A DNA stretch of 64,000 nt from Haliotis rubra (taxonomy: Eukaryota), in assembly GCF_003918875.1 (NCBI RefSeq), contig NW_025765586.1, positions 1-64,000 of the forward strand, in the 5' to 3' direction. This document shows positions 3,389-62,594 of the stretch, one piece after another. Under the pieces are notes generated by a model, which was not told where the DNA came from, did no database searches, and saw nothing but the letters and a program-made list of their open reading frames with translations. Numbering within the stretch: the stretch's first letter is position 1; every line of letters begins with the position of its first letter. The position numbers and the translations under genes are program-made.

Positions 3389-3474
3389 GTATCGTAACGT
3401 TCTTGAATGCAGCAGTCAGAAGAACAACAACCATATTACACTAGCTCTTAATTGAGATGCATAAGTTTTATTTC

Positions 3475-15200: not shown

Positions 15201-15930
15201 TGCCCAAGCTTTCAGGTTCTGGAAGAACTTCTATGACACAATGACGTACTTGCGAGTAGACACTCAGTTCCATAACTCCGAGAGAAAGATTGTACCTCAC
15301 GTTTTAGTTGATCAACGGAACGGCAGCCTCACCATTCTTCTACATAACTATGACCAAAAGCCAAATCATGTAAAGCTCTCTTTCGACAAGGGTTGGTTCC
15401 ATCCGACAAGTGGAAAGTCCACCTGTGAATATCTGAATGCACAGAAGAAAGGAACGCTGGCAACAAACCAGCCAGTTCACGTCTCCAACTCCATGGTAAC
15501 CGTTCCTGCTGAAGCCAGTTGTTACTTCCAGTTCCACACAAGCCACAACTTTGCCCATGCTCCTACTGTGACCCAGAATACCTACTACTCCACCGACATG
15601 GTTGTCCCCATTCACAACACCGTCGTTGATGTTAAAGTTAACGTCCCGAACATTGGCAACCTTGACTTTGTTCGTCTGAGGGTTAGTGTTAGTTTCAGCA
15701 TGAAGTCTCCCAATCAGAAACTCAAGACAGTGGTTGTAAACTCTCACACCTTAACGTCCTTCTACGGCCTGCAGACCCACAATGGCCCGGATGAGGCTAC
15801 AGTCTGGGATGTCTTTGAGTACAACGTCCCCAACAACCTGCTACACCAACACAATAACGACGTCAAACTTAGCTTCTCTGAGACCGGGGGTTATGTATCA
15901 ACTGTGGCAGTGATCGTCGGAAGTCACTGA
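12250..15930 (+). CDS. GH86-like beta-porphyranase/agarase copy C (exons 12250-12480, 13703-13835, 14467-15930; single +1 T at ~15080)
   Basis: Exons of 231, 133 and 1464 bp with GT-AG boundaries and compatible phases (0, then 1). ORFs 14418-15137 and 15007-15930 join if one T is removed from a T run. NEP and SEFG motifs; AATAAA at 15962. Confidence 0.85.
13351..13653 (-). mobile_element. L2/CR1-type LINE 3' fragment in intron 1 of copy C
   Basis: TFGRKSFACSAPLLWNSLP...SFKRLLKTHLF; (TTA)n tail; TSD AGATGTGAA; absent from the equivalent site in copies D and G. Confidence 0.85.
13958..14412. repeat. Unclassified interspersed repeat in intron 2 of copy C (also 21057-21478 in copy D)
   Basis: Local inverted repeat ACAATTATTGACTTC...GAAGTCAATAATTGT with a CCAATCAG end motif; looks like a non-autonomous DNA element. 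Confidence 0.4.
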
Positions 15931-16014: not shown

Positions 16015-16238
16015 GACCCGTGAAGATCCAGGTTAGAATATTGATCTTCAGTAACCCTTGCTTGTCGTAAGAGGCGACTAACGGATCGGGTGGTCAGGCT
16101 TGCTGACTTGTTTGCCACATGTCATCGGTTCCCAATTGCGCAGATCGATGCTCATGCTGTTGATGACTGGATTGTCTGGTCCAGACTCGATTATTTACAG
16201 ACCGCCGCCATATAGCTGGAATATTGCTGAGTGCGGCA
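16015..16238 (+). mobile_element. SINE-like element (family B)
   Basis: GACCCGTGAAGATCC...TTGTCGTAAGAGGCGACTAA...GCTGGAATATTGCTGAGTGCGGC; more than 10 copies in the window. Confidence 0.85.
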
Positions 16239-19805: not shown

Positions 19806-22800
19806 ATGAAATGGTTGACACTTTTCGTGTGTATTCTATCAAGCGCAACATGTGATTACACTGTGTCCATTTATCCTGAAATTCTCAAGATTGGGGCCGT
19901 TACTCATTTCAACCATGGGCGATGGAATGGTAAGAATGGACTGGACACACCGGCAAGTATTGCTCATGTTACGGAGGTTGGAGCGACGGCAGCCCGATGG
20001 TTGAACAGAGATATGGCAGGGGGACTATTTGAGAAGGTAGGACGTATGGATGAATCTGATAGCAGATGGTAGTGATATAATTATCATTTCCTGTACAATT
20101 AACTGATCAACATTGTGGTTTTTTAGATATGTGGGTTCTAAGTGAACGCTCTAATGCCGGGAGTATAATTTGAAAGAAATGTCAACTTTATTCGCATATT
20201 TCTCAAAATGTGTTTTGCCTTTATGCCCTCTTCATATGTACTTTTAAACAAGTAGGGATATTCAATGAAAGGTGTCACAACTATTGATATTTTATATCAT
20301 TAATGAGATAAATAGTTTAACATTGTAACGGGAACACCTGCATCACTCGTTGATTGTCAAACAAGTCCAAAGTAAACTTTTAATAACGAAAGAAGTTCAC
20401 AACACATTGGGAATGCATGGATCTCTAGTAATATTACCTCAAAACTGAATATCATTTATTTTATATTTTTGTTGTTGAAGTTTGAAATGTTCACACGCAC
20501 GCACGCACGCGCACGCACATTCACATAACAGTTGCATCTAGTAGTTAGTCAGTAGAGTTTTATACTGTCTGTTACAATATTACAGAAGTATGACGAAAAT
20601 TGATTCTGTGAGGAATGTTTGTGAGATATGGCGTGGTCGACTGAATGCACATTTTATGACGATGTCCTAACACGATGACCAGTGAAGTAATAACTGCACA
20701 TCTATCAAACTGAACCCACGCCAACTTCTTCCTTGATACTCTCGACTTATGAGGCTATCTATTCCCTGACTCCACCTAACACTGACCATTCAGTTTTTAG
20801 ATGTGAAGAGGTAACTATGACTAACACTGTATTCCATTTCATGGCAGGCATCTGAAAACCCCAACAAGAAGGGCTACCCTGACCCCAAGTACTTTCAGGC
20901 CCATCAACAGGAAATCTGCACCAAATACTTGGATAATATGAATGGATATCACAATCCTGAAGTTGTCATGGAAATAAAGGGTAATTCAGTTTTAACCTTG
21001 GTGTGAATGAAAGGTTTCATGTCTGAAATGTGTTCATGAGTGAGGGAGAGGGAGCTACTATACAATTATTGAAGCCGAGGTGAATATCACGTGTCCAAGG
21101 TCGATAAATCATTGGATCAACCGAACTGAAGTCAATAATTGTTTTATTATAAGACAAAAGTCGTGAATACCTGTTTTTCTGTGACACAGTCATGAATCTT
21201 CGTGGTGTTATGTTGTCTGCCATTTTGATACAGATGGGATGTAACTCTAAACCAACACAGTCACAGGGACGAAGCGATCGCTTCCTTATCTAGCGTGACG
21301 CACTCAGTGCGGAGTTCCCAGCTGGATTATCCCAAGTCTACTTTAGCAACGGGATGTGCTTGGATTGTTAAATCAACCTCTCGGGACGAGGCGAGGTTGA
21401 CATCGCTTAGCGTCAAAGCTGTGATGTAACCAAGTGGGCCAATCAGAAGGGCGGAAATCTACCCGTCATAAAATAAATACAGTTGTACTACGTCAATATT
21501 TGCCATTGTTACCCACCTGGTTTGTATCCAGGTATCACATGGCCTCACTGGATGGACACCTCTGCCCACCACGGATTCTTCCCAAACAACATCGATGCTG
21601 CTGCTGAGTTCGTCTTTCTGCTGGTCTATGCAGTCAACAAAGGAACCAAAGGACAATCACCTATGTTCTTCGAAGTCATCAATGAACCAGGGAGCCAATG
21701 GCGGAACACGAACTGGACTTCCTTCATCATATTTCGTCAGGCTGTTGCTCAGAAAATTAAGGCAAAATACCCCAATATGAAGATCGGAGGTCCAACATTA
21801 ACTGGAGCTTCTGCATATTTTGATCGTGAAGACTTCAAGATTTTGGAACAAATCAACAGATTTTTTGGACATGGCTCTGACCCATTTAGATTTTCTCTTT
21901 TTCTCATTTCATTCCTACACAAGTATGGATGTAAGTGGAGGGACGCATCATTTCCATAGAAACTCTGAGGCCAAGATCTTTGGTCTTCTGGATTTAGTTG
22001 AGAGCTACTCTCATAAGAAGAAAGGTTCTCAGTTCAATGTCATTGTGAGTGAATTTGGTCTTGGGCCATTAACAGGAATTGATGAACAGAAGCCATCCAC
22101 CTTTCTTGACTGGGCGTACATTTATCAACACAATGCCCAGATATTCACCTTTCTACAACGTCGGGATGTCATGAGAAAAGTGGTAGCTTTCTTGCTCACA
22201 TATACTGAACTTAAAGGGCAAGCAAGCATCAACTACAGCATCCTAGAAGAGAGTCTAAGGGAGTGGATATTGCTCCAAGCTTTGTGGTTCTGGAAGAACT
22301 TCTATGACAATGACGTACTTGCGAGTAGACACTCAGTTCCATAACTCCGAGAGAAAGATTGTACCTCACGTTTTAGTTGATCAACGGAACGGCAGCCTCA
22401 CCATTCTTCTACATAACTACGACCAAAAGCCAAATCATGTAAAGCTCTCTTTCGACAAGGGTTGGTTCCATCCGACAAGTGGAAAGTCCACCTGTGAATA
22501 TCTGAATGCACAGAAGAAAGCAGCTCTAGCTACAAACCAGCCAGTTCACGTCTCCAACTCCATGGTAACCGTTCCTGCTGAAGCGAGTTGTTACTTCCAG
22601 TTCCACACAACCCACAGCTTTGCCCATGCTCCTACTGTGACCCAGAACACCTACTACTCCACCGACATTGTTGTCCCAATTCACAACACCGTCGTCGATG
22701 TTAACATTAACGTCCCGAACATTGGCAACCTTGACTTTGTTCGTCTGAGGGTAAGTGTCAGTTTCAGCATGAAGTCTCCCAATCAGAAACTCAAGACAGT

Positions 22801-23001
22801 GGTTGTAAACTCTCACACCTTAACGTCCTTCTACGGCCTGCAGACCCACAATGGCCCGGAATGAGGCTACAATCTGGGATGTCTTTGAGGTACAACGTCC
22901 CCAACAACCTGCTACACCAACACAATAACGACGTCAAACTTAGCTTCTCTGAGACTGGAGGTTATGTGTCAACTGTGGCAGTGATCGTTGGGAATCACTG
23001 A
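19806..23001 (+). CDS. GH86-like beta-porphyranase/agarase copy D (exons 19806-20036, 20848-20980, 21532-23001; several indels in exon 3)
   Basis: Close paralogue of copy C, including introns. Exon 3 is 1470 bp versus 1463 expected, with a garbled stretch at ~22245-22310. Ends VIVGNH-TGA. Confidence 0.75.
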
Positions 23002-25099: not shown

Positions 25100-25700
25100 G
25101 ATATCCCAAATCACTCACAGTGTCGTGTTTCCAAATGCTTGGAACAGAAGTGTTATTTGCCCTCTCTCCAAATCTGGCCAAATGATGCCAACCACTACTT
25201 CATCTACTGATACCAGTGAAAGAGTGAGTTTCATTTTACGCCACACTGAGCAATATTCAGCTATATGGCGGCGGTCTGTAAATAAACGCGTCTGGACCAG
25301 ACAATCCAGAGATCAACAGCATGAGCATCGATCTATGCGATTGGGAACCGATGACATGTGTTAACCAAGTCAGCGAGCCTGACCAACCGATCCTGTTAGT
25401 CGCTCTTACGACAAGCATGGGTTACTGAAGATCAGTTCCAACCCGGATCTTCGCGGGTTCGACTGATACCATGTGTAGAATATGTACTTCCATTCGTAAC
25501 TCAGGACTGCCGATTTGTTTGTGATAAATATAGGATAATTAATGAACGACAAACAGACTTTAGACCGAACTGCTCAACTATTGGTAATATATTTAGCTAA
25601 CAATAATACAGAGACTAGTATATGCAGGCCAACAAGGGGAGACTTTACTGCCTCTTTGTCAATTTCTCAAAAGCACGTGACAGGATCAGTCATGATATCA
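25100..25700 (+). mobile_element. Decayed LINE reverse-transcriptase fragment interrupted by a family B SINE (25223-25460, minus strand)
   Basis: FPNAWNRSVICPLSKSG; NERQTDFRPNCSTIGNIF; LYCLFVNFSKARDRI. SINE TSD ACTGATACCA. Confidence 0.65.
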
Positions 25701-27083: not shown

Positions 27084-30000
27084 ATGAAATGGCTGACACT
27101 TTTCGTGTGTATACTATCAAGCGTAAGATGTGATTACACCGTGTCCATTTATCCTGAAATTCTCAAGATTGGGTCAGTTACTCATTTCAGACACTCGCGA
27201 TGGAATGGTAAGAATGGACTGGACAGCCCCACAACTATTCCTTATGTGAAGAAAGTTGGCGCAACAGCAGCCAGATGGTTGAACAGAGATTTGAGAAATG
27301 GACTATTTGAACAGGTAAGACGTTATATTACTATAGTATTGATAATGTAGAATAAAATCAAACTTCCTCACCCACCCAAGACGTACAGGCTGACAAACTA
27401 ACCCTCCTAAATTATTCATGTCAGGCAGCTGAGAACGCCCTTAAAATGGCTCAATTACTCATTCACCCAATCCCACTTACTGACTCGTTCTAGACATACA
27501 AGAAGGATATCTAACCTTCTATCACGTTTCATGGCAGGCACCTGAGGACCTCCACAAGAAGGGCTATCCTGACCCGAAGTACTTCGAGGCGAATCAAAAT
27601 AAAATCAGCTACAATTACCTAAACGTTATGAATGGATACGGCGACCCTGAAATGGTCATGGAAGTAAAAGGTATTTCAATGGAGTGTGTCTCGGGATATC
27701 GATATAGAAGATAGAGATCGATAATCGTTAACTAACTTGATTATCGATAAATATCGGATAAGTTACTTTCAGCAAAGATGAAAAAAATATCAGAAAGAGT
27801 GAGTGAGTTTAGTTTTATGCCGCACTCAGCAATATTCCAGTTATATGGCGGTAGAAAGAAATGAATATATGTCAAACCTCTGGTGAATATGTGTCACACC
27901 TCTGGTTAATATGTCACACCTCTGGTGAATGTATGTCACACCTCTGGTGAATATGTCACACCTCTGGTGAATATGTCACACCTCTGGTGAATATATGTCA
28001 CACCTCTGGTGAATGGCGACATGTTTATGCTGGGTTACTAACGAGCAGCGTCCTGAACACAATTTAGAAACAGACCATGATTAAAAACCTAACTTTGTGT
28101 ATTGTGTGAGTAAACTAAAACTTTAAGGTTTATGTCCGATATCATCGATTACACTATCTTCATATCGATAGTCTTTGATAATTTTTCCCTGACGATATTT
28201 CCGATTATCGATATTTTAGCCAGCCCTATAGTGCCATGTGATTCTAATTTTCTGTAATCGGAAAAAACTAATCTAATGTGTATGGGTAGGTACTGTGAGT
28301 GGTGATGGATATATTTCCTACACTAGTACACCTATGAAGCTTTTCTTTGCCCCTGTGATGAGCCAGCATATTGCTAAACAGTCAATAAGCTGACGACTGG
28401 GAACATACCTAATTTTGAGATTTTGAAGAATGTAATTAGTTTGAAGAACTGAAAATTGATTTCACAAATAATTTTTCTTGCAAGGTCAGTGATTGGTCAA
28501 TGCGACAGTGACCACAAGCCATATACTGTAGTTCCCATGAAGAGTGTTCTTGTCCGCTGGCTTTGTGTTGTCGAGAAACCTACTTAGTTTATGATAAATC
28601 ATAATATGCCTTATATGTTTGACGTTGTTCATAGAAGGGGACACATGTTCGCTGTCTCAGATGTAACTGGGATAGCAAAGAACAACAGAATGTTACAGAA
28701 TCATGCCAAATATCAAACTTCCAGTTTCCACGCCCGTGAAGATGCAGCTTCCAATTTATTCTGTGGTAAACACACGAGGCCCTATTTTCCACCACTAGTG
28801 TGAAACGCCTTGAATATAGCTAGATGTGCCATATAAAGTGGTCAATACACATTCGTATGTATGTTTCTCTTCGGTTAGCCTTTTAAGCCCATCTTAAGAC
28901 TCCCAACGAAAATTACCGATCAAAATTCCTTTACATTGCATAAAATTATACGGGATCTAAGAGCGGTTCAAACAGGTGTTGATGGACGATAAACGGTCCT
29001 AATTTTCAAATAACGACCAAGGTTATTTATTCAATTATATTGAATGACTGTTTCGAAATGTCAATTCCCATTCTTGTCAAGAAAGCTTAAAACTACATTT
29101 AAGAGTGACCTAGCTTTTACGAAAGTCTGAATGCACAGTCATATGTCCATAAGACTCTGTTAATTGAAAAAACATTAAGAACGGTAGAGCGTTGAGTTTT
29201 GATTCTCAATAGTTTCAGCAATTACAATCCATGTTTCTAATCTGTGTATACAGTATTAAATATATTGCTTGTTGACGAATAAGCTGCAATATTTTCATAG
29301 TTTAATCAGTTGTTAAAAAGGGAGTTAAACCCAACTCTCTCGAATTCACAGGCCTGTTGTTTTATATTCAGGGTTGAACTGGCCTCACTGGATGGACACC
29401 TCTGCCCACCACGGATTCTTCCCCAACAACATCGATGCTGCTGCTGAGTTCGTCTTTCTGCTGGTCGACACAGTCAACAAAGGAACCAAAGGACGAGCAC
29501 CTACATTCTTCGAAATCATCAATGAACCCGACGCTCAATGGCAGAACACAAACTGGACTTCCTTCATCAAATTTCATCAGGCTGTTGCTCAGAAAATTAA
29601 GGCCAAATATCCCCATATGAGTGTTGGTGGTCCAACGTTAACTGGAGCTTCCCTTCTGTTTGACCGTTATGACTTTAGGAATTGGAAACGATATGCAGAC
29701 TTTTTAGATATGGGTCTCCACCATTTAGATTTTTTCTCATTTCATTCCTATGCAAGTTTGGTCGTAAATGGAGAGTCGCACCATTTCCATGGGAGCTCCG
29801 AAGCTAAGCTCTTTGGACTTATTGACCTGGTCGAGAGCTACTCTCACAAGAAGAAAAATAAATTCTTAGATATCATTGTCAGTGAATTTGGTCTTGGTCC
29901 AGTATCAGGACTTAATGTACAGAAACCATCCACCTTTCTTGACTGGGCATATATTTATCAACACAATGCCCAGATATTCACCTTTCTACAACGTCGGGAT

Positions 30001-30835
30001 GTCATGAGAAAAGCTGGTAGCTTTCTTGCTCACATATACTGAACTTAAAGGGCAAGCAAGCATCAACTACAGCATCCTAGACAAGACCCACAAGGAGAGG
30101 GATATTGCTCAAGCTTTCAGGTTCTGGAAGAACTTCTATGACACAATGACATACTTGCGAGTAGACAGTCAGTTCCATAACTCCGAGAGAAAGATTGTAC
30201 CTCACGTTTTAGTTGATCAACGGAACGGCAGCCTCACCATTCTTCTACATAACAACGACCAAAAGCCAAGTCATGTAAAGCTCTCTTTCGACAAGGGTTG
30301 GTTCCATCCGACAAGTGGAAAGTCCACCTGTGAATATCTGAATGCACAGAAGAAAGCAACTCTAGCTACAAACCAGCCAGTTCACGTCTCCAACTCTATG
30401 GTAACCGTTCCTGCTGAAGCGAGTTGTTACTTCCAGTTCCACACAACCCACAACTTTGCCCATGCTCCTACTGTGACCCAGAACACCTACTACTCCACCG
30501 ACATTGTTGTCCCAATTCACAACACCGTCGTCGATGTTAAAGTAAACGTCCCGAACATTGGCAACCTTGACTTTGTTCGTCTGAGGGTAAGTGTCAGTTT
30601 CAGCATGAAGTCTCCCCATCAGAAACTAAAGACGGTGATTGTGAACGGTCACTCCTTGGCGTCCTTCTACGGTCTACAGACCCACAATGGCCCGGATGAG
30701 GCTACTGTGTGGGAGGTCTTTGAGTACAACGTTCCCAACAACCTGCTACACCAACACAACAATGACGTCAAACTGAGCTTCGCTGAGTCTGGAGGTTATG
30801 TATCAACTGTGGCAGTGATCGTTGGAAGTCACTGA
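27084..30835 (+). CDS. GH86-like beta-porphyranase/agarase copy E (exons 27084-27314, 27538-27670, 29372-30835; single +1 at ~30015)
   Basis: Exons of 231, 133 and 1464 bp with canonical splice sites; EIINEP and VSEFG motifs; ORFs 29374-30042 and 30026-30835 join after removing one base; AATAAA at 30866. Confidence 0.85.
27862..28014. repeat. Minisatellite, ~20-22-bp unit GAATATGTCACACCTCTGGT, ~7 copies, in intron 2 of copy E
   Basis: Direct tandem repeats visible in the sequence. Confidence 0.9.
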
Positions 30836-33016: not shown

Positions 33017-33104
33017 TTATCGTAACGTTCTTGAATGCAGCAGTCAGAAGAACAACAACCATATTACACTAGCTCTTATTTGAGATGCATAAGTTTTATT
33101 TCCA

Positions 33105-33248
33105 ATTTGTTTGACCGTTATTACTTTAGAAATTGGAAACGGTGTGCAGAACCTTTTGGACATAGTTCTAACCATTTAGATATTTAGACTTACATCCTAC
33201 ACAAGTATGGATGCAAGTGGAGGCTCACACCATTTCCATGGCAGTTCT
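33105..33248 (+). pseudogene. Degenerate fragment of GH86-like exon 3 (duplicate of 3475-3620)
   Basis: Same sequence within the duplicated block. Confidence 0.75.
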
Positions 33249-36517: not shown

Positions 36518-39500
36518 ATGAAATATCTTACACTTTTCGTGTGTATTCTATCAACCGCAAGGTGTGATTACACCGTGTCCATTTATCCTGAAATTCTCAA
36601 GATTGGGGCCGTTACTCATTTCAACCACGGGCGATGGAATGGTAAGAATGGACTGGACAGCTCAACAACTATTCCTCTTGTCAAGGGAGTTGGCGCAACC
36701 GCAGCCAGATGGTTGAACAGAGATTTGGGAAATGGGTTATTTGAAGGTAAGACACATTATATTGTTTCTGAAACTTTAATGAGAATTGTTAATTGTCTTC
36801 CCTTAAAATGAGTGTCTTCCCTTGGAAGTTTAGTGCCATACGACCCATGAGGTGCGATTTTTGTTACCATTTTCATTTAAACAGCTGAATTGAAGATGAT
36901 GTTACCACGGAGTGAATAATAATATCCATGGACATCATACAGCGTGACTGGCTTGATATGGGAGGAATGTTTTATTTGGTGCTTTACAGATCTTTGATGA
37001 TACCCATGATCAGGTTATGTTGTTCACATGTCCAGAAACCCGAAAGAATGTTTTAGACGAACAGGTTATGTTGTTCACATGGATTGTTACCATAGGTTTC
37101 TGGCGTGCTCAACGGACGTAGGGCGGTGGGGTAGCCCCGTGGTTAAAGCGTTGGCTCGTCACGCCGAAGACCCGGGTTCGATTCCCCACATGGGCACAAT
37201 GTGTTAAGCCCATTTCTGGTGTCCCCCGCCGTGATATTGCTGGAATATTGCTAAAAGCGGCGTTAAACTAAACTCAGTCAGTCAGTCAGTCAAGGGACGT
37301 ATTTCTGCATTTTGAATTGCTGTGTCAGGGTCAGCGTCACTCCTGCACCCTTTCATTTAATGGCTTATCCCAAAGTTCATTAGATTACCAAACTTATTGT
37401 CTCATTTCAGACACACATAATGACTATCTAACCTTCTATCACGTTTCATGACAGGCACCTGAGGACCCCCACAAGAAGGGCTATCCTGACCCGAAGTACT
37501 TCGAGGCGAATCAAAATAAAATCAGCAGCAATTACTTAAACGTTATGAATGGATACGGAAACCCAGAAATGGTCATGGAAATAAAAGGTATTTCAACATT
37601 AACACCCAAATGAATAAATGGGTGGAGGAATGTCTCTTGAGATAATATACCCCTGCCATACTATAGTTTGGCATGAAATGCATGTGGACCCGTTTTTTTG
37701 TAAATATCTCTTCATCCAATGACCCAATCGATCTCAAACTGTGCAAGTGGATGTTTTGTCAGACAACCTAATCACATTGTAAATCGCCGATTTTATGCAT
37801 TTGTATTAAAGAATCTGTCTATGTAACTGTCAACAAAATAAACAGCAGACCGCAGACTGCTTGCAGAGGTAGGGAGCCAATGACCTGTAACAGCGGCAGT
37901 GTTGGGTCATAAAGGTAAAGGCATTTCATGCCAAACTATAATCTTCTGTAGTCGGAAATATGTATATGTTGATTTGTATGCTCTGTACGTGAGAAATGCC
38001 AACACTGTTGATTTGCATTGTCCTGGCACCACTCATGCTGACATAGTGCCGGATTTTGCTGTCTGTGTAGGCCTCTTTAAATATACCGATGTGAGTTGGT
38101 GTTTCCGGATAGGTCTTCGGACGACAGAATGGCAGTAACCAGAACCAAGCTGACATCTATGTCAACGAATGTGTTCACTTGTGTATGGATGAAACAGATG
38201 GCATGTTCTAGCACTACCGGTATTACCGGTTTACCGGTATACCGTAATACGCTTTTCAGAAGATATGTATTGCAATATTTTTTTCAGAACCATAACATAT
38301 ATTTTTTTAGGGACTTATCATGTACAGTCTAAGTAAACTTAGATTCAGTATTATTTGTTACACTGCTATACTGAGTCTAACAAAACCTTGTGGAAGGTCG
38401 CGTCAGGTAACCTTTGATGGACCTATGACCGTCCAATCAAAAGCGAGACGGCCGAACGGATTTAACCAGTCAGCCAACGGCTACTATTTAGGGTTCGGCG
38501 AGACTTACAAAATGGATTTTCCCGTCCCCGGTCGCCAACACTGATCTCCCAACAAACGAAAATCCGCATAAAACACATATATTTGACCTGCAGTATATGC
38601 GCTTTGGGGTTCCTGTTGACATGGTTATCATAAGCTAATATTTCCTCAAGTTGACATGCTTGAATACTGACAAATGCTATTTTCAGCGAATGTTTACCTA
38701 CTGCTGTGGCGTGCATCACTACGAACCGATCGTACGGAAAATAGCATTCGGAATCGTTCGGGTACAAACTTTTCGAGGTAAAAGGTTCAAAGTTCGCGAT
38801 TTGGTAAGCTGTGTTCTGATTGGTCAATTGGAAAGGTTACCTGACGCGACCTTCTACTAGGTTCTGTGAGACTCAGTATAGCAGTGTAACGAATAATACT
38901 GAGTCTAAGTTTACTTCGGGTAAGTTTACTTAGACTGTTATAATGTAGAAAATAGGATAGGCATGTACAATTAGTGTCACTTACTGTCTAACACTTAATT
39001 TCGAATAAGTCGCAATACGTATCGCAATACGGGTACCTGAATCTATTTGCCAATACACAGACCTATCATATCAAAGGTTTTATACACTTGAACGACCAGG
39101 CAGAGATGCCGCTTTTCACGATGTGACTGGACAGTATGCTTCACAAGCGTGTGCTGCGTTTTGGCAAACCCTTTCAAACTGAAACCTTGTTTTCATTGCC
39201 TGAAGTGTGCTACTAAACAGTGGCATCATCGACATATTATCATCGTCGATAGGTACATCACTATGATGAAATACATTAGGGGTTGCTTAATTAAGTTCCA
39301 TGTGTATATAACGAGCGGTTGTGTACTTTTTAATCTACGTATTCTCAGCAATTCTATAACCCTTTTCTCATCTGTTATTACGGTGATACTGCTGGATGTT
39401 GAGTATTGAATGTATTGCCTGTTGAAATATGACAATTTAATCAACTGTTGAAAGTGGAGTTAGACCCTGCTCACTCTAATTCATAGGTTTGATAATACAT

Positions 39501-40968
39501 ATTCAGGTGTGTATTGGCCTCACTGGATGGACACCTCTGCCCACCACGGATTCTTCCCGAACAACATCGATGCTGCAGCTGAGTTCGTCTTCCTGCTGGT
39601 CGATGCAGTCAACAAAGGAACCAAAGGACAAGCACCTATGTTCTTCGAAGTCATCAATGAACCAGAAAGTCAATGGAAGAACACGGACTGGAATACCTTT
39701 ATCAAATTTCATCAGGCTGTTGCTCGGAAAATTAAGGCAAAATATCCCCATATGAGGGTTGGAGGTCCAACGTTAACTGGGGCTTCCATTTTGTTTGATC
39801 GTAATGACTTTAGGAATTGGAAACAGTATGCAGACTTTTGGATATGGGTCTCAACAATTTAGATTTTTTCTCATTTCATTCCTACACAAGTATGGATGTA
39901 AGTGGAGGCTCACACCATTTCCATGGGAGTTCCGAAGCTAAGCTTTTTGGACTTCTGGATCTAGTTGAGAGCTACTCTCATAAGAAGAAAAATAAATTGT
40001 TGGATATTATAGTCAGTGAATTTGGTCTCGGTCCAGTATCAGGACTTGATGTACAGAAGCCATCCACCTTTCTTGACTGGGCATACATTTACCAACACAA
40101 TGCCCAGATATTCACCTTTCTACAGCGTCGGGATGTCATGAGAAAAGCCGTAGCTTTCCTGCTCACATATACTGAACTTAAAGGGCAAGCAAGTATTAAC
40201 TATAGCATTCTGGACAAGACCCACAAAGAGAGGGACATTGCCCAAGCTTTCAGGTTCTGGAAGAACTTCTATGATACAATGACATACTTACGAGTAGACA
40301 GTCAGTTCCATAACTCCGAGAGAAAGATTGTACCTCACGTTTTAGTTGATCAACGAAACGGCGGCCTAACCATTCTTCTACATAACTACGACCAAAAGCC
40401 AAGTCATGTAAAGCTCTCTTTCGACAAGGGTTGGTTCCATCCGACAAGTGGAAAGTCCACCTGTGAATATCTGAATGCACAGAAGAAAGCAACTCTAGCT
40501 ACAAACCAGCCAGTTCACGTCTCCAACTCCATGGTAACCGTTCCTGCTGAAGCGAGTTGTTACTTCCAGTTCCACACAACCCACAACTTTGCCCATGCTC
40601 CTACTGTGACCCAGAAAACGTACTACTCCACCGACATGGTTGTCCCCATTCACAACACCGTCGTCGATGTTAAAGTTAACGTCCCGAACATTGGCAACCT
40701 TGACTTTGTTCGTCTGAGAGTTGGTGTCAGTTTCAGCATAAAATCTCCCCATCAGAAACTCAAGACGGTGGTTGTGAACGGTCACTCCTTGACGTCCTTC
40801 TATTCTCTGCAGACTCACAGTGGCTCTGGTGAAGACACTGTATGGGAGGTCTTTGAGTACAACGTCCCCAACAACGTTGTACACCAACACAACAACGACG
40901 TCAAACTTAGCTTCTCTGAGACTGGGGGTTATGTATCAACTGTGGCAGTGATCGTTGGAAGTCACTGA
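36518..40968 (+). CDS. GH86-like beta-porphyranase/agarase copy F (exons 36518-36746, 37455-37587, 39507-40968; -2 at the end of exon 1 and -1 at ~39838)
   Basis: Same exon layout as the other copies. Lesions are TTTGAAG for TTTGAGAAG and a T4 run for T5. Near-identical to copy B. Confidence 0.82.
37120..37289 (+). mobile_element. tRNA-derived SINE (family A), duplicate of 7450-7618
   Basis: A/B boxes, (CAGT)n tail. Confidence 0.9.
38321..38940. mobile_element. MITE nested in a hAT-like MITE (duplicate of 8631-9247)
   Basis: Same TIRs and same host element. Confidence 0.8.
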
Positions 40969-42160
40969 TGGTGATTAGTGTACTGAATCCCAATAACTGA
41001 ATAAATTCGGTTACAACATAGAAGTTGCACTTTACTTTATTTCAATGTGATGGAATGTGATATAAATCTCACCAAACCATTAAAACTTGTACTGAAATTT
41101 GTTACTTCATTAGGTCCATGTAAAATAAAACAAAACATCTGTATGTTTACAGAAATGTTGAAATTTTAAAATTTGCCATTATTGAAATCTATGTAACTGA
41201 TAAGAAAGGGCTATTAATAACAGTTCAGTTCAGTTCATGTCCATCTGCCTCTCAACAAATGTATGAATTAAAAATTGATCTAACAATAATCATAAACCTC
41301 ATTTTTATCAAAAGAGTTTCCCAGGGTCACAATTCTCGAAAAGGTGAGGTACAATGACCTTGTCACAATGGTTAAGGTATTAAGGTATCTAGAAAGATTG
41401 CTTCACACACGCACACGCACGCACGCACACACACACATTGGTTATCTTTAATCGACCATCAACTCACATTCTGGTGAAAGAAACGTCAGATTTAGGATCC
41501 TGTTGGGTACAGACGTCGCGAAAAAAGGACTATTGGGTACAGACGTTTGCCTTATTTATGTTTTGTGCACTTATCCCAATTTCGAGTTATTTAATCATTT
41601 GTCGTTCTCATTTGAACCCAAACGGACTATATATCCGAAAAAAGTCAGCAGTATGACTTTGATTAAATACAACAAGACTGCAGACCACCACCAGCCAAAT
41701 TACTTGGGATCGTAGAGAATTGCTTCTGCTTTCTGCATGATTCCAATCAGGATTAACGCCATCACTTTGGCGATCAGTGGAAAATGGTAACAATGTTAAT
41801 GGAAGGAACTACTATCCAAACATAAAGACACAATACCAGTACCATGTCGCACTAACACAATCAAAGATAACAAATATTGGAACGTGTGCAATTTTTGTTT
41901 TAGCCTTTTGGTACAAAGATTAATTTCCTTACTAATTACAGTCGTGAGGAATTTATGTAGAATCTGTTTGCACAGAAGCCAAATTGAAAATTTTATATAT
42001 ATGTACTTCAAGTGATTCTTTTGGGTATAAAATGTACATTTCTCTATAAACGTATTTATACAATACACTTACAATTATTTGTTGTTTTAATCTAAATCAC
42101 ATCACATATATACGTCTTCCATTAGTGTCTTATTAGTGTAATAGTGTCTATATTTGTAAT

Positions 42161-42213
42161 GGGGATTGTGCAGCTGATAAGATAGCAACATTCTTTCCAA
42201 CGAAAGTATATAA
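42161..42213 (+). promoter_or_regulatory. Conserved proximal promoter of copy G
   Basis: TGATAAGATAG at 42175-42185, TATATAA at 42207-42213. Confidence 0.65.
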
Positions 42214-42268
42214 GAGGTCCTATTAGCTGATTAGCACGGAGTTAATACCTAACGTAAAAGCAGTGGAG

Positions 42269-45200
42269 ATGGAATGGTTGGCACTGTTCGTGTGTCTACT
42301 ATCAAGTGTAACATGTGATTACACAGTGTCCATTTATCCTGAAATTCTCAAGATTGGGGCCGTTACTCATTTCAACCACGGGCGATGGAATGGTAAGAAT
42401 GGACTGGATTCACCGGCAAGTATTGCTCATGTTAAGGAGGTTGGAACGACGGCAGCTCGATGGTTGAACAGAGATATGGCAGGGGGACTATTTGAGAAGG
42501 TAGGACATTGATGTACTGGATAAGCACATGGTAGCGGTATAGTTATTTTCTTATTTATGTACATTTAACTGATCAACATTGTGGTTTTAGATATGTGGAT
42601 TCTAAGCGAATGCTTCTATGCCGGGAGTACAATTTGAAACCAGACGTCAGCATGTAGATTCTCTTATTTCTCAAAGTTTGTTTTTTGCCTTTATGCCCTC
42701 TTGATATGAATGATTAAGCAAGCAGGGGTATTCAATAAAAATGTCCCACAACTATTGATATTTTATATCATTAATGAGATAAATAGTTTAACAGTATCAC
42801 AGAAACATCTGACTGAGATTTGCATTCATCGTTGAACGTCACATGACCATAGATTGTGTTCTTAGAGTGGCCAAAACGCCATACTGTCCATCAGGTCCTT
42901 TCCTATGAAAAGCAAAACCCATTAATATCGGGTGAATCCACCTCTGTTCTCCTCAAGAAAATCCCCCCATTCAACGATGCATATTCCTAATGAAACTTCT
43001 AATATCAACTTAGTTCAATTCATCCAATTCAATTTTAATCAATCCGAATACATAACGTTGGTCCAACGACGATTGACTTAATCCTGCCGTTCTTGACACA
43101 CCGACGTCTTGCAGTAATATGAGATTCCGCATTATTAACCCTGTGTCCTCTCATAACATCGGTGTTTTCCCTGAAGCTCATCTCCGATTTGAGAGGCACT
43201 TTGACCACAAACCAAACAGCCCGTCTTGTGCGGCAGTTGCTGCCCTCGGTTGTGTCATCAACATTGTTCACGCTATCGTAACAGGATGGCCAATGACGTA
43301 ATAATTACACATATTGCAGTGAGTGAGTTTAGTCTTACGCCGTACTCAGCAATATTCCAGCTATGTGGTCTGTAAAAAATCGTGTGTGGACCAGACCATC
43401 CAGTGATCAACAGCATGAGCATCGATCTGCGCAATTGGGAACCGATGACATGTGTCTGACCACCCGATCCCGTTAGTGACCTCTTACGACAAGCATGGGT
43501 CACTGAAGGCCAGTATTCTAACCCGGACCTTCACGGGTCACACATAGTGCATTGAACTTTGAACTGATATTATACCACTTTCATCATTGACACTGTTGAC
43601 TATATCCTGTCTCAACTAACACTGAAACATTCAGCAAAACCATTGTTACCAGCCACAATGTTTTTAAATGTGATGAGGTAACTATGAATAACTAAGACTG
43701 TATTCCATTTCATGGCAGGCATCTCAAAACCCCAACAAGAAGGGCTACCCTGACCCCAAGTACTTTCAGACCCATCAAAAGGAAATCTGCACCAAATACT
43801 TGGACAATATGAATGGATATCACAATCCGGAAGTTGTCATGGAAATAAAGGGTAATTCAGTTTTTTATCTTGTTTAAATTAAAGACAATTTCTTAAATAT
43901 GTTAAAATATTTGCAGAAGGTTGAGAATACAAGCATGTCTTTCATTATCCAATGGAAAGATTGTATAGCTGAGAGGAATGGTTACGGTGGAATTAAACAA
44001 ATTCCACAATTGACAAGCGGAAAATTTTGTTTAAGATTCTCACGATTAAAATGGGGATATTACATGTAAAACAAACTGTGTTTGAGATCGGGATCGGGAA
44101 GTAGCTCCACACACACCACCACACCACACATCANNNNNNNNNNNNNNNNNNNNNNNNNNNNNNNNNNNNNNNNNNNNNNNNNNNNNNNNNNNNNNNNNNN
44201 NNNNNNNNNNNNNNNNNNNNNNNNNNNNNNNNNNNNNNNNNNNNNNNNNNNNNNNNNNNNNNNNNNNNNNNNNNNNNNNNNNNNNNNNNNNNNNNNNNNN
44301 NNNNNNNNNNNNNNNNNNNNNNNNNNNNNNNNNNNNNNNNNNNNNNNNNNNNNNNNNNNNNNNNNNNNNCTCTATTCATATAAACAACTATCAGAGAAAG
44401 AAGAGGGAGGGCTACAAACAGTTGCCTTATGTCTATTGGTGTTATCGTTACCCACCTGGTTTGTATCCAGGTGTCACTTGGCCTCACTGGATGGACACCT
44501 CTGCCCACCACGGATTCTTCCCGAACAACATCGATGCTGCAGCTGAGTTCGTCTTCCTGCTGGTCGATGCAGTCAACAAAGGAACCAAAGGACAAGCACC
44601 TATGTTCTTCGAAGTCATCAATGAACCAGAAAGTCAATGGAAGAACACGGACTGGAATACCTTTATCACATTTCATCAGGCTGTTGCTCGGAAAATTAAG
44701 GCAAAATATCCCCATATAAGGGTTGGTGGTCCAACGTTAACTGGAGCTTCCATTTTGTTTGATCGTAATGACTTTAGGAATTGGAATCGGTATGCAGACT
44801 TTTTGGATATGGGTCTCAACAATTTAGATTTTTTCTCATTTCATTCCTACACAAGTATGGATGTAAGTGGAGGCTCACACCATTTCCATGGGAGTTCCGA
44901 AGCTAAGCTTTTCGGACTTCTGGATCTAGTTGAGAGCTACTCTCACAAGAAGAAAAATAAATTGTTGGATATTATAGTCAGTGAATTTGGTCTCGGTCCA
45001 GTATCAGGACTTGATGTACAGAAGCCATCCACCTTTCTTGACTGGGCGTACATTTACCAACACAATGCCCAGATATTCACCTTTCTACAGCGTCGGGATG
45101 TCATGAGAAAAGTGGTAGCTTTCCTGCTCACATATACTGAACTTCAAGGGCAAGCAAGTATCAACTATAGCATTCTGGACAAGACCCACAAAGAGAGGGA

Positions 45201-45933
45201 CATTGCTCAAGCTTTCAGGTTCTGGAAGAACTTCTATGATACAATGACGTACTTGCGAGTAGACAGTCAGTTCCATAACTCCGTGAGAAAGATTGTACCT
45301 CACGTTTTAGTTGATCAACGGAACGGCAGCCTTACCATTCTTCTACATAACTACGACCAAAAGCCAAGTCATGTAAAGCTCTCTTTCGACAAGGGTTGGT
45401 TCCATCCGACAAGTGGAAAGTCCACCTGTGAATATCTGAATTCACAGAAGAGAGCAACGCTGGCAACAAACCAGCCAGTTCACGTCACTAACTCCATGGT
45501 AACCGTTCCTGCTGAAGCGAGTTGTTTCTTCCAGTTCCACACAACCCACAACTTTGCCCATGCTCCTACTGTGACCCAGAACACCTACTACTCCACCGAC
45601 ATTGTTGTCCCCATTCACAACACCGTCGTCGATGTTAAAGTTAACGTCCCGAGGATTGGCAACCTTGACTTTGTTCGTCTGAGAGTTGGTGTCAGTTTCA
45701 GCATGAAGTCTCCCCATCAGAAACTCAAGACGGTGGTTGTGAACGGCCACACCCTGACGTCCTTCTACGGTCTACAGACCCACAGCGGCCCTGGTGAAGA
45801 CACTGTATGGGAGGTCTTTGAGTACAACGTCCCCAACAACGTTGTACACCAACACAACAACGACGTCAAACTTAGCTTCTCTGAGACTGGGGGTTATGTA
45901 TCAACTGTGGCAGTGATCGTTGGGAATCACTGA
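42269..45933 (+). CDS. GH86-like beta-porphyranase/agarase copy G, intact 608-aa ORF (exons 42269-42499, 43719-43851, 44471-45933)
   Basis: 231+133+1463 = 1827 nt open frame; signal peptide MEWLALFVCLLSSVTC. Putative acid/base Glu in VINEP (codon 44623-44625, about E173) and nucleophile Glu in VSEFG (44983-44985, about E293). AATAAA at 45965. Intron 2 contains an N gap. Confidence 0.9.
43319..43539 (-). mobile_element. SINE family B in intron 1 of copy G
   Basis: Consensus match; TSD CACACATA(T/G)TGCA. Confidence 0.85.
44134..44369. other. Assembly gap (N run) in intron 2 of copy G
   Basis: Run of N. Confidence 1.
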
Positions 45934-46029
45934 GTGTTCAACATGCAAGTTATCCTAATAACTGAATAAATATTTTCAAAACCTCAATAGTTATACTCAA
46001 ATATATCACCAAGTGAAGTGCAATTGGGG

Positions 46030-46842
46030 AGTGAATGAGTTTAGTTTTACGCCGCTTTTAGCAATATTCCAGTAATATCACGGCGGGGCTTGACATGCTG
46101 TGGCCATGTGGGGAATCTGAAGTACAAACAATCAATACTACATCTGTTAGTCTTTCAATCATAATGGACGACCATAGCTTGTAAATAACATTTCTAAAAC
46201 CCTTCTTCATTGTTTTTTTTGTTTTCTGTTTGTTGTTTAACCCCCCACTCAGCAATATTCCAGCTGTATGGCGGCATTCTGTAAATAATCGAGTCTGAAC
46301 CAGACAATCCAGTGACTGACGTTGTGGGCAACAATCTACGCAATTGAGTGAGTGAGTTGGTGAGTTTAGTTTTACGCCACACTCAGCAATATTCCAGCTG
46401 TATGGAGGTGGTCTGTAAAGAATCGAGTCTGGACCAGACAAGCCAGTGATCAACAGTATGAGCATCGATCTGCGCAATTGGGCACCGATGACATGTGTCA
46501 ACCAATTCATCAAGCCTAACCAACCAATCCCGTTTGTCACCTTTAACGACAAGTATGGGTTGGAGACCAATTGTACCCCGGATCGTCGTGATACATTTCT
46601 TGATGAAGGAAACAGTATTGAGGCAAATATTTTCACTTCGGCTTTAAATAAAAGATGGATATAGTGGTACACTGCCTTAGATTTTCCCGTTCAGTATCAA
46701 TAACAAAGCAGTGAGTTGGCAATATTCCGGCAATATCAGAGCGGGGGAAAAGGGCTTCACACATTGTACCCATGTGGGGAATCGAACCCGGGTCTTCGGC
46801 GTGACGAGCGAACGCTTTAACCACTTGGCTACCCCGCCGCCC
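46030..46842 (-). mobile_element. Cluster of SINEs: family A fragments (46030-46115, 46715-46842) and family B (46245-46340 partial, 46345-46583)
   Basis: Reverse-complement matches to both consensuses. Confidence 0.8.
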
Positions 46843-52478: not shown

Positions 52479-52728
52479 NNNNNNNNNNNNNNNNNNNNNN
52501 NNNNNNNNNNNNNNNNNNNNNNNNNNNNNNNNNNNNNNNNNNNNNNNNNNNNNNNNNNNNNNNNNNNNNNNNNNNNNNNNNNNNNNNNNNNNNNNNNNNN
52601 NNNNNNNNNNNNNNNNNNNNNNNNNNNNNNNNNNNNNNNNNNNNNNNNNNNNNNNNNNNNNNNNNNNNNNNNNNNNNNNNNNNNNNNNNNNNNNNNNNNN
52701 NNNNNNNNNNNNNNNNNNNNNNNNNNNN
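52479..52728. other. Assembly gap (N run), followed by a (CT)n microsatellite at 52729-52838
   Basis: Run of N. Confidence 1.
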
Positions 52729-54956: not shown

Positions 54957-55231
54957 GACCCGTGAAGATCCTGGGTAGAATAGGTCTTCAGCAACCCATG
55001 CTTGCCATAATAGGCGACTTTGCTTGTCTTAAGAGGCGACTAACGGGATCGGTTGGTCAGGCTCGCTGACTTGGTTGACACATGTCATCGGTTCCCAATT
55101 GCGCAGATCGATGCTCATGCTGTTGATCACTGGATTGTCTGGTCCAGACTCGATTATTTACAGACCGCCGACATATAGCTGGACAATTGCTGAGTGTGGC
55201 GTAAAACTAATCTCACTCACTCACTCACTCA
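54957..55231 (+). mobile_element. SINE family B (long variant)
   Basis: TSD CTATTTTAATCGTG; (CACT)n tail. Confidence 0.9.
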
Positions 55232-58055: not shown

Positions 58056-58324
58056 GTGAGTGAGTGAGTTTAGTTTTACGCCGCACTCAGCAATATCCCA
58101 GCTATATGGCGGCGGTCTGTAAATAATCGAGTCTGGACCAGACAATCCAGTGATCAACAGCATGAGCATCGATCTGCGCAATTGGGAACCGATTACATGT
58201 GTCAACCAAGTCAGCGAAACTGACCACCCGATCCCGTTAGTCGCCTCTTACGACAAGCATAGTCGCCTTTTATGGCAAGTACATGGGTTGCTGAAGATCT
58301 ATTCTACCCGGATCTTCACGGGTC
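58056..58324 (-). mobile_element. SINE family B (long variant)
   Basis: TSD GTGACCCATAAT. Confidence 0.9.
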
Positions 58325-62355: not shown

Positions 62356-62594
62356 ACCCGTGTTTATCCGGGTTAGAATTGATCTTCAGTAACCCATGCT
62401 TGTCGTAAGACGCTACTAACGGGATCGGGTTGTCAGGCTCGCTGACTTGTTTGACACATGCCATCGTATCCCAGTTGTGTAGATCGATGCTCATGCTGTC
62501 ACTGGATAGTCTAGTCCAGGCTCGATTTTTTACAGACCGCCGCCATATAGCTAAAATATTGCTGAGTGCGGCGTAAAACTAAACTCACTCACTC
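62356..62594 (+). mobile_element. SINE family B
   Basis: TSD CAAGAAGT(T/C)ATTCA. Confidence 0.88.

What the first reader, a model, noticed from the sequence alone, without database searches (positions are those of the whole stretch)
42269..45933. Gene architecture consistent with bacterial horizontal transfer followed by 5' intron gain
Seen: 80% of the CDS, including both catalytic glutamates and the C-terminal domain, lies in one uninterrupted 1463-bp exon. The only two introns are near the 5' end, at identical positions in every copy. There is a short signal peptide, a TATA box and AATAAA ~30 nt after the stop. Inference: a bacterial gene was acquired once, gained eukaryotic signals, then duplicated. 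Introns filled with host transposable elements exclude bacterial contamination.
Basis: partly seen in the sequence, partly recalled or inferred. Interest (0 to 1): 0.8.

Follow-up and report, generated by a model that had tools for sequence, protein, structure and literature searches.

The report
Abalone GH86 seaweed-enzyme gene, anciently acquired
This is a real three-exon abalone gene for a secreted enzyme of family GH86, otherwise known from bacteria that cut red-seaweed agar and porphyran; molluscs have carried it, with the same two introns, since before chitons, mussels and snails diverged, so a foreign origin is likely but a direct bacterial donor is not shown.

Summary
Exons 42269-42499, 43719-43851 and 44471-45933 give an open 1827-nt CDS (608 aa). 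Exon 3 is 80% of it and holds both catalytic glutamates. The N gap (44134-44369) lies inside intron 2. Spliced contigs of related abalones join exon 2 to exon 3 with nothing between, so no exon is hidden there.

The protein is a GH86 member by sequence, catalytic motifs and predicted fold. All six full tandem copies in the window share both intron positions, but only this copy is open as assembled.

Contamination is excluded. Molluscs form one clade, and no other animal carries the family in the libraries searched. The transfer is not an abalone event: Mytilus, Pinctada, an unnamed bivalve and the chiton Liolophura have both introns at the same columns and phases.

The nearest relatives are two protist transcripts, one a foraminifer; bacterial sequences come next. 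The tree cannot be rooted. Donor and "intron gain" therefore stay open, because the introns could have come from a eukaryotic donor. "Introns filled with transposons" is overstated: there is one ~220-bp interspersed repeat, in intron 1.

The scan already reached the same reading on other DNA of this genome (s1-320407, s1-320397, s1-335030).

The parts
42207..42214 (+). TATA-like box (TATATAAG), 55-62 nt upstream of the ATG
   Evidence: Read directly. GTATATAAGA is conserved upstream of copies A, c1, c2, c3 and c5. The related-species spliced contig starts aligning at 42243. Its function is inferred.
42269..42499 (+). Exon 1 (231 nt, aa 1-77). It encodes a 16-aa signal peptide (42269-42316) and the first strands of the GH86 barrel.
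   Evidence: ORF and GT donor. Hydrophobic N-terminus. It is homologous to the N-terminus of protist GH86 and, more weakly, of bacterial GH86. A spliced contig covers 42243-42497.
42500..43718 (+). Intron 1 (1219 nt, phase 0, GT..AG)
   Evidence: A contig in run X1 skips exactly 1219 nt with GT..AG ends. The same column and phase are found in six other mollusc genes.
43318..43540 (.). Interspersed ~220-bp SINE-like host repeat inside intron 1
   Evidence: More than 15 copies at 77-90% identity on both strands across the window. Contig depth here is very high in all four runs. No Rfam match.
43719..43851 (+). Exon 2 (133 nt, aa 78-122). It starts at the conserved (E/Q)(D/N)PxxxGY motif shared with bacterial GH86.
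43852..44470 (+). Intron 2 (nominally 619 nt, phase 1, GT..AG). It contains the assembly gap 44134-44369, so its true length is unknown.
   Evidence: Contigs of X1, X4 and X7 skip it with no letters between. The same column and phase are found across molluscs.
44471..45933 (+). Exon 3 (1463 nt, aa 122-608). It encodes most of the (beta/alpha)8 barrel and both C-terminal beta-sandwich domains. Stop TGA is at 45931-45933.
   Evidence: Uninterrupted ORF. PDB 5ta1 matches at E=7e-18 over 442 residues. Pfam matches Cellulase, GH39, BPA_C and Porphyrn_cat_1.
44623..44625 (+). Codon of the predicted catalytic acid/base Glu173 (I-N-E-P motif)
   Evidence: It aligns to the NEP motif of BuGH86. It is an invariant column, E173, in 20 mollusc proteins.
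44983..44985 (+). Codon of the predicted catalytic nucleophile Glu293 (S-E-F motif)
   Evidence: It aligns to BuGH86 E322, the residue changed in the E322Q crystal form 5ta0.
45965..45970 (+). AATAAA polyadenylation signal, 31 nt after the stop
   Evidence: Read directly. The motif is conserved after the stop of all six copies.

Best explanation
The stretch is an intact three-exon gene of an abalone (Haliotis). It encodes a 608-aa secreted glycoside hydrolase of family GH86 and is one unit of a tandem array.

The protein has a 16-aa signal peptide, a (beta/alpha)8 barrel with the retaining pair Glu173 (acid/base, NEP) and Glu293 (nucleophile, SEF), and two C-terminal beta-sandwich domains. It most likely acts as a secreted endo-beta-galactanase on red-algal agar, porphyran or funoran-type galactans in the gut. 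The substrate is inferred from the family and was not measured.

The family entered the mollusc lineage once, before chitons, bivalves and gastropods diverged, from a non-animal source. By then it already had, or soon acquired, two introns near the 5' end. It was later lost in many molluscs and strongly multiplied in abalone by tandem duplication with gene conversion.

The ultimate source is probably bacterial, because almost all of the ~640 detectable relatives are bacterial or metagenomic. Whether the transfer was direct or went through, or ran parallel with, a protist lineage is unresolved.
For: Shown:
- An open 1827-nt CDS with canonical splice sites.
- Spliced contigs in three runs of related abalones skip exactly 1219 and 619 nt.
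- GH86 membership by sequence: 5ta1 at E=7e-18.
- GH86 membership by fold: the AF2 model of the 90%-identical P0001 has pLDDT 87.8. It gives TM 0.76-0.82 over the full length to all three solved GH86 enzymes, and the next best is 0.5 or lower.
- Catalytic Glu residues are conserved.
- Homologues occur in Haliotis (at least 5 species, dozens of paralogues), Mytilus, Pinctada, a bivalve-like metagenome contig and Liolophura.
- The two introns are at the same column and phase in all seven genes solved exactly.
- Molluscs are monophyletic (100/100) on a long stem of 0.95. Their sisters are two EukProt transcripts (100/98). Each protist alone still joins molluscs (98 and 95 SH-aLRT).
- Full-length mollusc hits score 590 bits or more (fragments and fused gene models down to 251), and the best non-mollusc hit scores 218.
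- Named members of the other side of the tree are Verrucomicrobiota (Rubellicoccus) and Bacteroidota (Flammeovirga).

Inferred: the substrate, the digestive role, and the direction and date of the transfer.
Against: - No enzyme activity has been measured for any animal GH86.
- RNA-like runs labelled with the same species as the DNA holders showed no cover of the exons. Expression of this very copy is therefore not shown, and the spliced contigs are 85-90% alike and come from relatives.
- The tree is unrooted, so nesting inside bacteria is not demonstrated.
- The two protist sequences are long branches from transcriptomes of field or culture material. Their provenance cannot be checked here.
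- Exons 1-2 and exon 3 lie on opposite sides of a scaffold gap in an array of near-identical paralogues. The copy is also a mosaic: it is c2-like up to the acceptor and c5/c1-like from about 44486.
- Absence from other animals rests on protein libraries, not on genome-wide tblastn.
Confidence: 0.72

Rival explanations
1. One reading: a bacterium donated the gene directly to an animal ancestor, both introns were then gained de novo near the 5' end, and duplication followed.
For: - The great majority of relatives are bacterial or metagenomic.
- There are only two introns, both in the first 20% of the CDS, and a 1.46-kb terminal exon.
- Exons 1 and 2 encode parts homologous to the bacterial N-terminus. 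The introns therefore split an ancestral continuous ORF and do not add new exons.
Against: - No bacterial sequence in 1.84 billion representatives is closer to molluscs than the two protist transcripts are.
- The protists share mollusc-type motifs: GRWLxxDxN, and no insertion after NEP.
- The donor clade is unidentified, the stem is long, and the tree is unrooted.
Confidence: 0.35
2. Transfer between eukaryotes, or an old eukaryotic GH86 lineage. Under this reading molluscs received an already eukaryotic, possibly intron-bearing, gene from a protist such as a rhizarian food or symbiont organism, or the transfer went the other way.
For: - The clade of molluscs plus protists has 100/98 support and is stable when either protist is left out.
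- N-terminal motifs are shared, and the alignment extends into the part encoded by exon 1 only for these sequences and a few others.
Against: - There are only two protist sequences, each a singleton from a transcriptome.
- Identity to molluscs is only 22-28%.
- Long-branch attraction to the long mollusc stem cannot be excluded.
- No genomic evidence shows that they are nuclear genes.
Confidence: 0.25
3. Vertical inheritance: GH86 was present in an early animal or eukaryote ancestor and was lost almost everywhere except in some molluscs and protists.
For: - Within molluscs the gene behaves as vertically inherited. It is present in three classes with the same introns, and bivalves and chitons each form clades.
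- The nearest relatives are eukaryotic.
Against: - No homologue from any other animal groups with molluscs, and no hit scores between the mollusc group and the 218-bit protist hit.
- Very many independent losses would be needed.
- Intron density is far below what is usual for old animal genes (general knowledge).
Confidence: 0.1
4. The intact copy is an assembly product. Under this reading the scaffold gap in intron 2 joins exons 1-2 of one paralogue to exon 3 of another, and the real locus may be broken like its neighbours.
For: - The gap lies between the two parts.
- The upstream region and exons 1-2 are 96-99% like c2, whereas exon 3 is 97-100% like c5 and c1.
- All five neighbouring copies have frameshifts.
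Against: - The 101 nt to the right of the gap, including the acceptor, are of the c2/c3 type like the left side. The switch of type lies about 115 nt to the right of the gap, inside a sequenced contig.
- Order, orientation and nominal intron size (619, against 631 in c2 and 551 in c3) fit one gene.
- Gene-conversion mosaics are reported elsewhere in this array (scan note s1-335099).
Confidence: 0.1

Closest known systems
BuGH86 (Bacteroides uniformis beta-agarase, PDB 5ta0/5ta1/5ta5) and Aga86A_Wa (PDB 8h97)
   Same: Full-length three-domain architecture, with TM 0.80-0.82. The sequence match is E=7e-18 over 442 residues. It has the NEP acid/base and a Glu nucleophile at the position of E322.
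   Different: Identity is only about 17-18%. The animal protein lacks the insertion after NEP and has shorter loops. It is encoded by a spliced nuclear gene with a eukaryotic signal peptide. Its substrate is untested.
BpGH86A (Bacteroides plebeius beta-porphyranase, PDB 4aw7), the source of Pfam BPA_C and Porphyrn_cat_1
   Same: Same fold, with TM 0.76/0.81. Both accessory beta-sandwich domains are detected. NCBI's automatic name for the mollusc proteins is 'beta-porphyranase A-like'.
   Different: The Pfam scores for the accessory domains fall just under (BPA_C 26.1 against 26.2) or well under (Porphyrn_cat_1 19.1 against 27) the curated cut-offs. Identity is 16%. No evidence of porphyran specificity was examined.
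Foreign-origin carbohydrate-active enzymes of animals, for example the horizontally acquired alpha-amylases in bilaterians (PMC7003070)
   Same: A polysaccharide-degrading enzyme family with a mostly microbial distribution. It is patchy among animals, integrated with introns, and later duplicated.
   Different: Here the family is GH86, for which the papers searched describe no animal member. The event predates crown Mollusca. The nearest relatives are protist sequences, not bacterial ones.

Membership tests
Glycoside hydrolase family 86 (clan GH-A) | Significant sequence similarity to characterised GH86 catalytic modules | tested here: met
   phmmer of exon 3 against PDB gives BuGH86 5ta1 at E=6.9e-18 over residues 42-483. 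The next families (GH39) score E>=3.6e-5. The mollusc profile retrieves about 640 relatives, among them proteins that their sources name beta-agarase or porphyranase-like.
Glycoside hydrolase family 86 (clan GH-A) | (beta/alpha)8 barrel followed by two beta-sandwich domains | tested here: met
   The AF2 model of P0001 (90% identical to this copy) has pLDDT 87.8 and pTM 0.90. The top seven Foldseek hits are chains of the three solved GH86 enzymes, TM 0.76-0.82 over about 640 columns. TM then drops to 0.5 or lower. The model is of the H. asinina protein, not of the window's own spliced product.
Glycoside hydrolase family 86 (clan GH-A) | Two catalytic glutamates: the acid/base in N-E-P, and the nucleophile about 120 residues later | tested here: met
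   E173 (INEP) and E293 (SEF) are present. E293 aligns with the residue mutated in BuGH86 E322Q. E173 is invariant and position 293 is at least 90% conserved in 20 mollusc proteins.
Glycoside hydrolase family 86 (clan GH-A) | Pfam accessory domains BPA_C and Porphyrn_cat_1 above the gathering score | tested here: inconclusive
   BPA_C scores 26.1 bits against a cut-off of 26.2. Porphyrn_cat_1 scores 19.1 against 27. The structural match covers both domains.
Glycoside hydrolase family 86 (clan GH-A) | Endo-hydrolysis of beta-1,4 linkages in agarose, porphyran or related galactans | not testable with these tools
   This needs recombinant protein and substrate assays.
Horizontally acquired gene in an animal genome | Physically integrated in host DNA and not contamination | tested here: met
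   Spliceosomal introns with GT..AG ends, a host interspersed repeat in intron 1, a 47-kb tandem array, and eukaryotic TATA and AATAAA signals.
Horizontally acquired gene in an animal genome | Absent from related animal lineages, with relatives concentrated in the donor domain | tested here: met
   Among named hits, only Haliotis, Mytilus, Pinctada and Liolophura appear. The exhaustive search shows no non-mollusc animal grouping with them. This is limited to protein libraries, and not all 150 listed hits could be named.
Horizontally acquired gene in an animal genome | Recipient clade nested inside a donor clade in a rooted phylogeny | tested here: inconclusive
   Molluscs plus two protists form one side of a 100/98 branch, and 49 bacterial or metagenomic rows form the other. 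No usable outgroup was found: L001-L008 match only profile positions 153-261.
Horizontally acquired gene in an animal genome | Transcribed and correctly spliced in the host | tested here: inconclusive
   Spliced contigs at both junctions occur in runs of three related organisms, at 85-90% likeness. The same-species RNA-like run X20 gave no exon cover. All runs are RNA only by guess.

The most novel reading that the evidence does not exclude
GH86 has a distinct eukaryotic lineage shared by rhizarian-type protists and molluscs. Under this reading the mollusc ancestor obtained the gene from a eukaryote, possibly with its introns already in place, and not from a bacterium. Abalone then built dozens of host-encoded copies into its own red-seaweed galactan digestion system, largely independent of gut bacteria.
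Probability: 0.25. Interest if true: 0.65.

Novelty: new member of a known kind. Interest (0 to 1): 0.5.

Why it matters
Digestion of agar and porphyran by abalone and other seaweed grazers is usually credited to gut bacteria. One example is the Haliotis tuberculata microbiota study, PMC5870069, read. A large, host-encoded GH86 family that is ancient in molluscs makes the host's own contribution directly testable. It also adds a well-dated case, older than crown Mollusca, of a microbial-type carbohydrate-active enzyme fixed in animals. The shared introns give a minimum age for it. The protist sister sequences raise the question of whether such genes always come straight from bacteria. No paper in the library searched describes an animal GH86. 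NCBI's automatic names ('beta-porphyranase A-like') already flag the similarity, and the scan has reported the same family on other stretches of this genome.

Tried and rejected
- The genome-contig scan with the mollusc profile returned only eight weak clan-level relatives from Paenibacillus, Kiritimatiellia and Verrucomicrobia. They match profile positions 153-261 only, so they are useless as GH86 homologues or as an outgroup. The tree therefore stays unrooted.
- Word-index protein searches with exon 3, with the 20-sequence profile and with protist P0067 found no new taxa.
- The last cluster look-up named none of the deep bacterial-side rows.
- Six literature searches on GH86, porphyranase or agarase combined with abalone, mollusc, eukaryote or HGT, plus two looser searches that did not bear on the question, found no report of an animal GH86.
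- The Rfam scan of the window found nothing, so the intron repeat remains unclassified.
- Bacterial contamination is rejected, because of the introns, the host repeat and the array.
- A recent bacterium-to-abalone transfer is rejected, because the same introns occur in a chiton and in bivalves.
- A hidden exon in the gap is rejected, because spliced contigs and colinear orthologues leave no room for one.
- The window's own spliced protein has no reference id. Structure prediction therefore used the 90%-identical P0001, and database searches used exon 3 alone.
- I could not test whether the single-base frameshifts in c2 (15078) and c5 (39836), both in T runs, and in c4 (30014) are real or assembly errors. 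Reads were laid on the finding's own copy.
Full report
**1. What is there**

Reading 42000-46200 and splicing the three proposed exons gives an open 1827-nt CDS of 608 aa:
- Exon 1 is 42269-42499.
- Exon 2 is 43719-43851.
- Exon 3 is 44471-45933.

Both introns have GT..AG ends, and their phases are 0 and 1. Exon 3 is 1463 nt, which is 80.1% of the CDS. The window holds two N runs, 44134-44369 and 52479-52728.

**2. The gap, tested first**

The first N run lies wholly inside intron 2 (43852-44470), 282 nt after the donor and 101 nt before the acceptor. Three results show that no coding sequence is hidden in it.
- Exon 2 ends in phase 1 and exon 3 completes the codon, so the frame stays open to the stop.
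- Contigs from three runs of related organisms join 43849/43854 directly to 44469/44474. In X1 record 1, letters 439 and 440 are adjacent.
- Mollusc orthologues align across the junction without an insertion.

The gap does leave one thing open: whether exons 1-2 and exon 3 are truly contiguous, since that rests on the scaffold join.

This copy is also a mosaic. The upstream 324 nt and exon 1 are 99% identical to copy c2, and exon 2 is 96% identical. From about 44486 onward, exon 3 is 97-100% like c5 and c1. The 101 nt to the right of the gap, including a 15-nt acceptor identical to c2 and c3, are of the same type as the left side. The switch of type therefore lies inside sequenced DNA and not at the gap. 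I read that as gene conversion, as scan notes s1-335167 and s1-335099 suggest, and give a mis-join about 10%.

**3. The other details of the observation**

- Signal peptide: the N-terminus MEWLALFVCLLSSVTC|DY has a hydrophobic core. It is a low-confidence helix that precedes the first strand in the model.
- TATA box: TATATAAG at 42207-42214 is conserved upstream of five of the six copies.
- Polyadenylation signal: AATAAA at 45965-45970 is conserved after the stop of all copies.
- Repeats: intron 1 holds one ~220-bp interspersed repeat (43318-43540). It has more than 15 copies on both strands across the window and enormous contig depth in all runs. The readable parts of intron 2 hit no repeat. 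'Filled with transposable elements' is therefore too strong, but the argument against contamination stands.

**4. The array**

tblastn and blastn show six full copies on the + strand:

| Copy | Coordinates | State as assembled |
|---|---|---|
| c1 | 6436-11272 | several frame changes |
| c2 | 12250-15930 | +1 at 15078, in a T run |
| c3 | 19806-23001 | several frame changes |
| c4 | 27084-30835 | +1 at 30014 |
| c5 | 36518-40968 | -1 at 39836, in a T run, and 2 nt missing at the end of exon 1 |
| this copy | 42269-45933 | open |

The window also holds:
- a badly decayed partial copy at 3-1142;
- two 150-bp fragments of exon 3 at 3471-3617 and 33100-33247;
- an inverted lone exon 1 at 47300-47074.

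All six full copies have both introns at the same positions. Whether the single-base shifts are real or assembly errors could not be tested.

**5. What the protein is**

- Pfam matches exon 3 to the clan GH-A families Cellulase and GH39. It matches the two accessory domains defined on the Bacteroides plebeius porphyranase just under threshold for BPA_C (26.1 bits against 26.2) and further below for Porphyrn_cat_1 (19.1 against 27).
- Against PDB sequences, the best match is BuGH86 (5ta1) at E=7e-18 over 442 residues. INEP and SEF align to its catalytic motifs. The SEF glutamate aligns with E322, the residue mutated in 5ta0.
- An AlphaFold2 model of the 90%-identical H. asinina protein P0001, built on a 20-sequence alignment, has pLDDT 87.8 and pTM 0.90.
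- The model matches all three solved GH86 enzymes over the full length: BuGH86 at TM 0.82, Aga86A_Wa at 0.81 and BpGH86A at 0.76. Every other fold scores 0.5 or lower.

Membership of GH86 is therefore met on sequence, fold and catalytic residues. Activity and substrate are inferred.

**6. Where the family occurs**

Word-index searches return dozens of paralogues from Haliotis asinina, H. rufescens, H. rubra and H. cracherodii. They also return proteins from Mytilus californianus and M. galloprovincialis, Pinctada imbricata and the chiton Liolophura sinensis. The exhaustive search adds gene models from M. edulis and M. coruscus. Unnamed hits are most similar to bivalves (58-60% to Pinctada, from metagenome ERZ26168041) or to chitons (72% to Liolophura).

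The best hit to this copy is 90% identical, so the window's species is an abalone whose own protein is not named in the library. Other scan notes call it the blacklip abalone, which I did not verify.

The exhaustive HMMER search of 1.84 billion representatives with the mollusc profile finds 640 relatives. Full-length mollusc sequences score 590 bits or more; fragments and fused gene models score down to 251 bits. After that comes a gap:
- P0067 scores 218 bits. It is a Trinity transcript in EukProt whose organism is not given.
- Metagenomic and bacterial proteins score under 200 bits.
- P0078 is the EukProt Bolivina argentea sequence.
- Named bacteria are Rubellicoccus (Verrucomicrobiota) and Flammeovirga (Bacteroidota).

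**7. Intron positions across molluscs**

I solved the exact exon chains for six annotated genes on their genomic loci and mapped the introns on an alignment. Intron 1 (phase 0) and intron 2 (phase 1) fall in the same columns in every case:
- this copy;
- three other Haliotis paralogue lineages;
- Mytilus;
- Pinctada;
- Liolophura.

One H. cracherodii paralogue has an extra third intron. The bivalve-like metagenome contig L016 shows the same three-part layout. Gene and introns therefore predate the split of Polyplacophora and Conchifera. The duplication seen in the window is much younger.

Exons 1 and 2 encode segments homologous to the N-terminal part of protist and bacterial GH86. The conserved (E/Q)DPxRxGY motif starts exon 2. 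The introns thus split an ancestral ORF and do not append new exons.

**8. Phylogeny**

- A 105-row quick tree and a 68-row careful tree under LG+C20+F+G4 with ultrafast bootstrap and SH-aLRT agree.
- Molluscs are one clade (100/100) on a long stem (0.95).
- The two protist transcripts are their sister (100/98).
- All 49 other rows lie on the other side of that branch.
- With either protist removed, the other still joins molluscs, at 98 and 95.
- The protists also share mollusc-type motifs: GRWLxxDxN, and no insertion after NEP.
- Long-branch attraction cannot be excluded.
- The tree cannot be rooted. The only bacterial loci fetched from genome contigs are clan-level relatives covering about 100 profile positions.
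- Within molluscs, bivalves and chitons each form clades. Haliotis falls into at least two deep groups with weak backbone support.

**9. Reading**

- A foreign origin of the family in a stem mollusc is the most economical account of a distribution that is almost wholly bacterial plus molluscs plus two protists. I give it about 0.7-0.75.
- A eukaryotic intermediary or donor is about 0.25.
- Vertical descent with massive loss is about 0.1.

**10. Function**

The most likely mechanism is a secreted retaining endo-beta-galactanase acting on red-algal galactans in the digestive tract. This rests on family membership, intact catalytic residues, the signal peptide and the herbivorous habit of abalone and chitons. 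No step of it has been measured.

Spliced contigs come from relatives. The same-species RNA-like run gave no exon cover.

**11. Novelty**

The papers searched contain no report of an animal GH86. A study of abalone gut microbiota assigns agar and porphyran breakdown potential to bacteria.

NCBI's pipeline already names these proteins 'beta-porphyranase A-like'. The scan has already reported the family and the same evolutionary reading on other stretches of this genome: s1-320397, s1-320407 and s1-335030. I had reached that reading before I read those notes.

This particular gene is a new member of a known kind. Interest is moderate.

Noticed in passing
window 6436-11272, 12250-15930, 19806-23001, 27084-30835, 36518-40968: As assembled, the five other full GH86 copies all carry frame-shifting indels relative to the intact copy. 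c2 has +1 at 15078 in a T run. c4 has +1 at 30014. c5 has -1 at 39836 in a T run and loses 2 nt at the end of exon 1. c1 and c3 have several each. These are either pseudogenes or assembly errors.
   Followed up: partly
window 3-1142; 3471-3617; 33100-33247; 47300-47074 (minus strand): There is a heavily decayed partial exon 3 (81% identity, about 55 indels). There are two 150-bp fragments of the same part of exon 3. There is also an inverted lone exon 1 whose 81-codon frame is still open. These are debris of the array's duplication history.
   Followed up: partly
window 41945-42499 and 44486-45933: The intact copy is a mosaic. The upstream region and exon 1 are 99% like c2, the acceptor is of the c2/c3 type, and exon 3 from about 44486 is 97-100% like c5 and c1. 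This fits the gene conversion noted by other scan entries.
   Followed up: partly
window 43318-43540 and more than 15 other places (e.g. 16015-16237, 25222-25458, 46360-46582, 55021-55221, 58059-58260, 62356-62593): A ~220-bp interspersed repeat occurs on both strands, with very high contig depth in RNA-like runs of four organisms. It has no Rfam match and is unclassified, possibly a SINE.
   Followed up: partly
L015:121-1115: In a bivalve-like contig from metagenome assembly ERZ26168041, about seven tandem exon-2-like segments lie upstream of a GH86 exon 3.
   Followed up: no
L014:4006-5445 (H. cracherodii gene for P0061): This paralogue has a third intron (phase 2, after aa 352) that is absent from all other genes examined. 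It is either a lineage-specific intron gain or an annotation that skips an insertion.
   Followed up: no
P0064 (Mytilus edulis), P0066 (Mytilus coruscus): These are gene models in which a GH86 part is fused to a DDE-1 transposase domain, or is named CHST1. They are probably annotation artefacts or transposon insertions in mussel copies.
   Followed up: no
window 52479-52728: A second assembly gap lies outside the array, in a repeat-rich region with no ORF of 150 aa or more between 46.7 and 64 kb.
   Followed up: no
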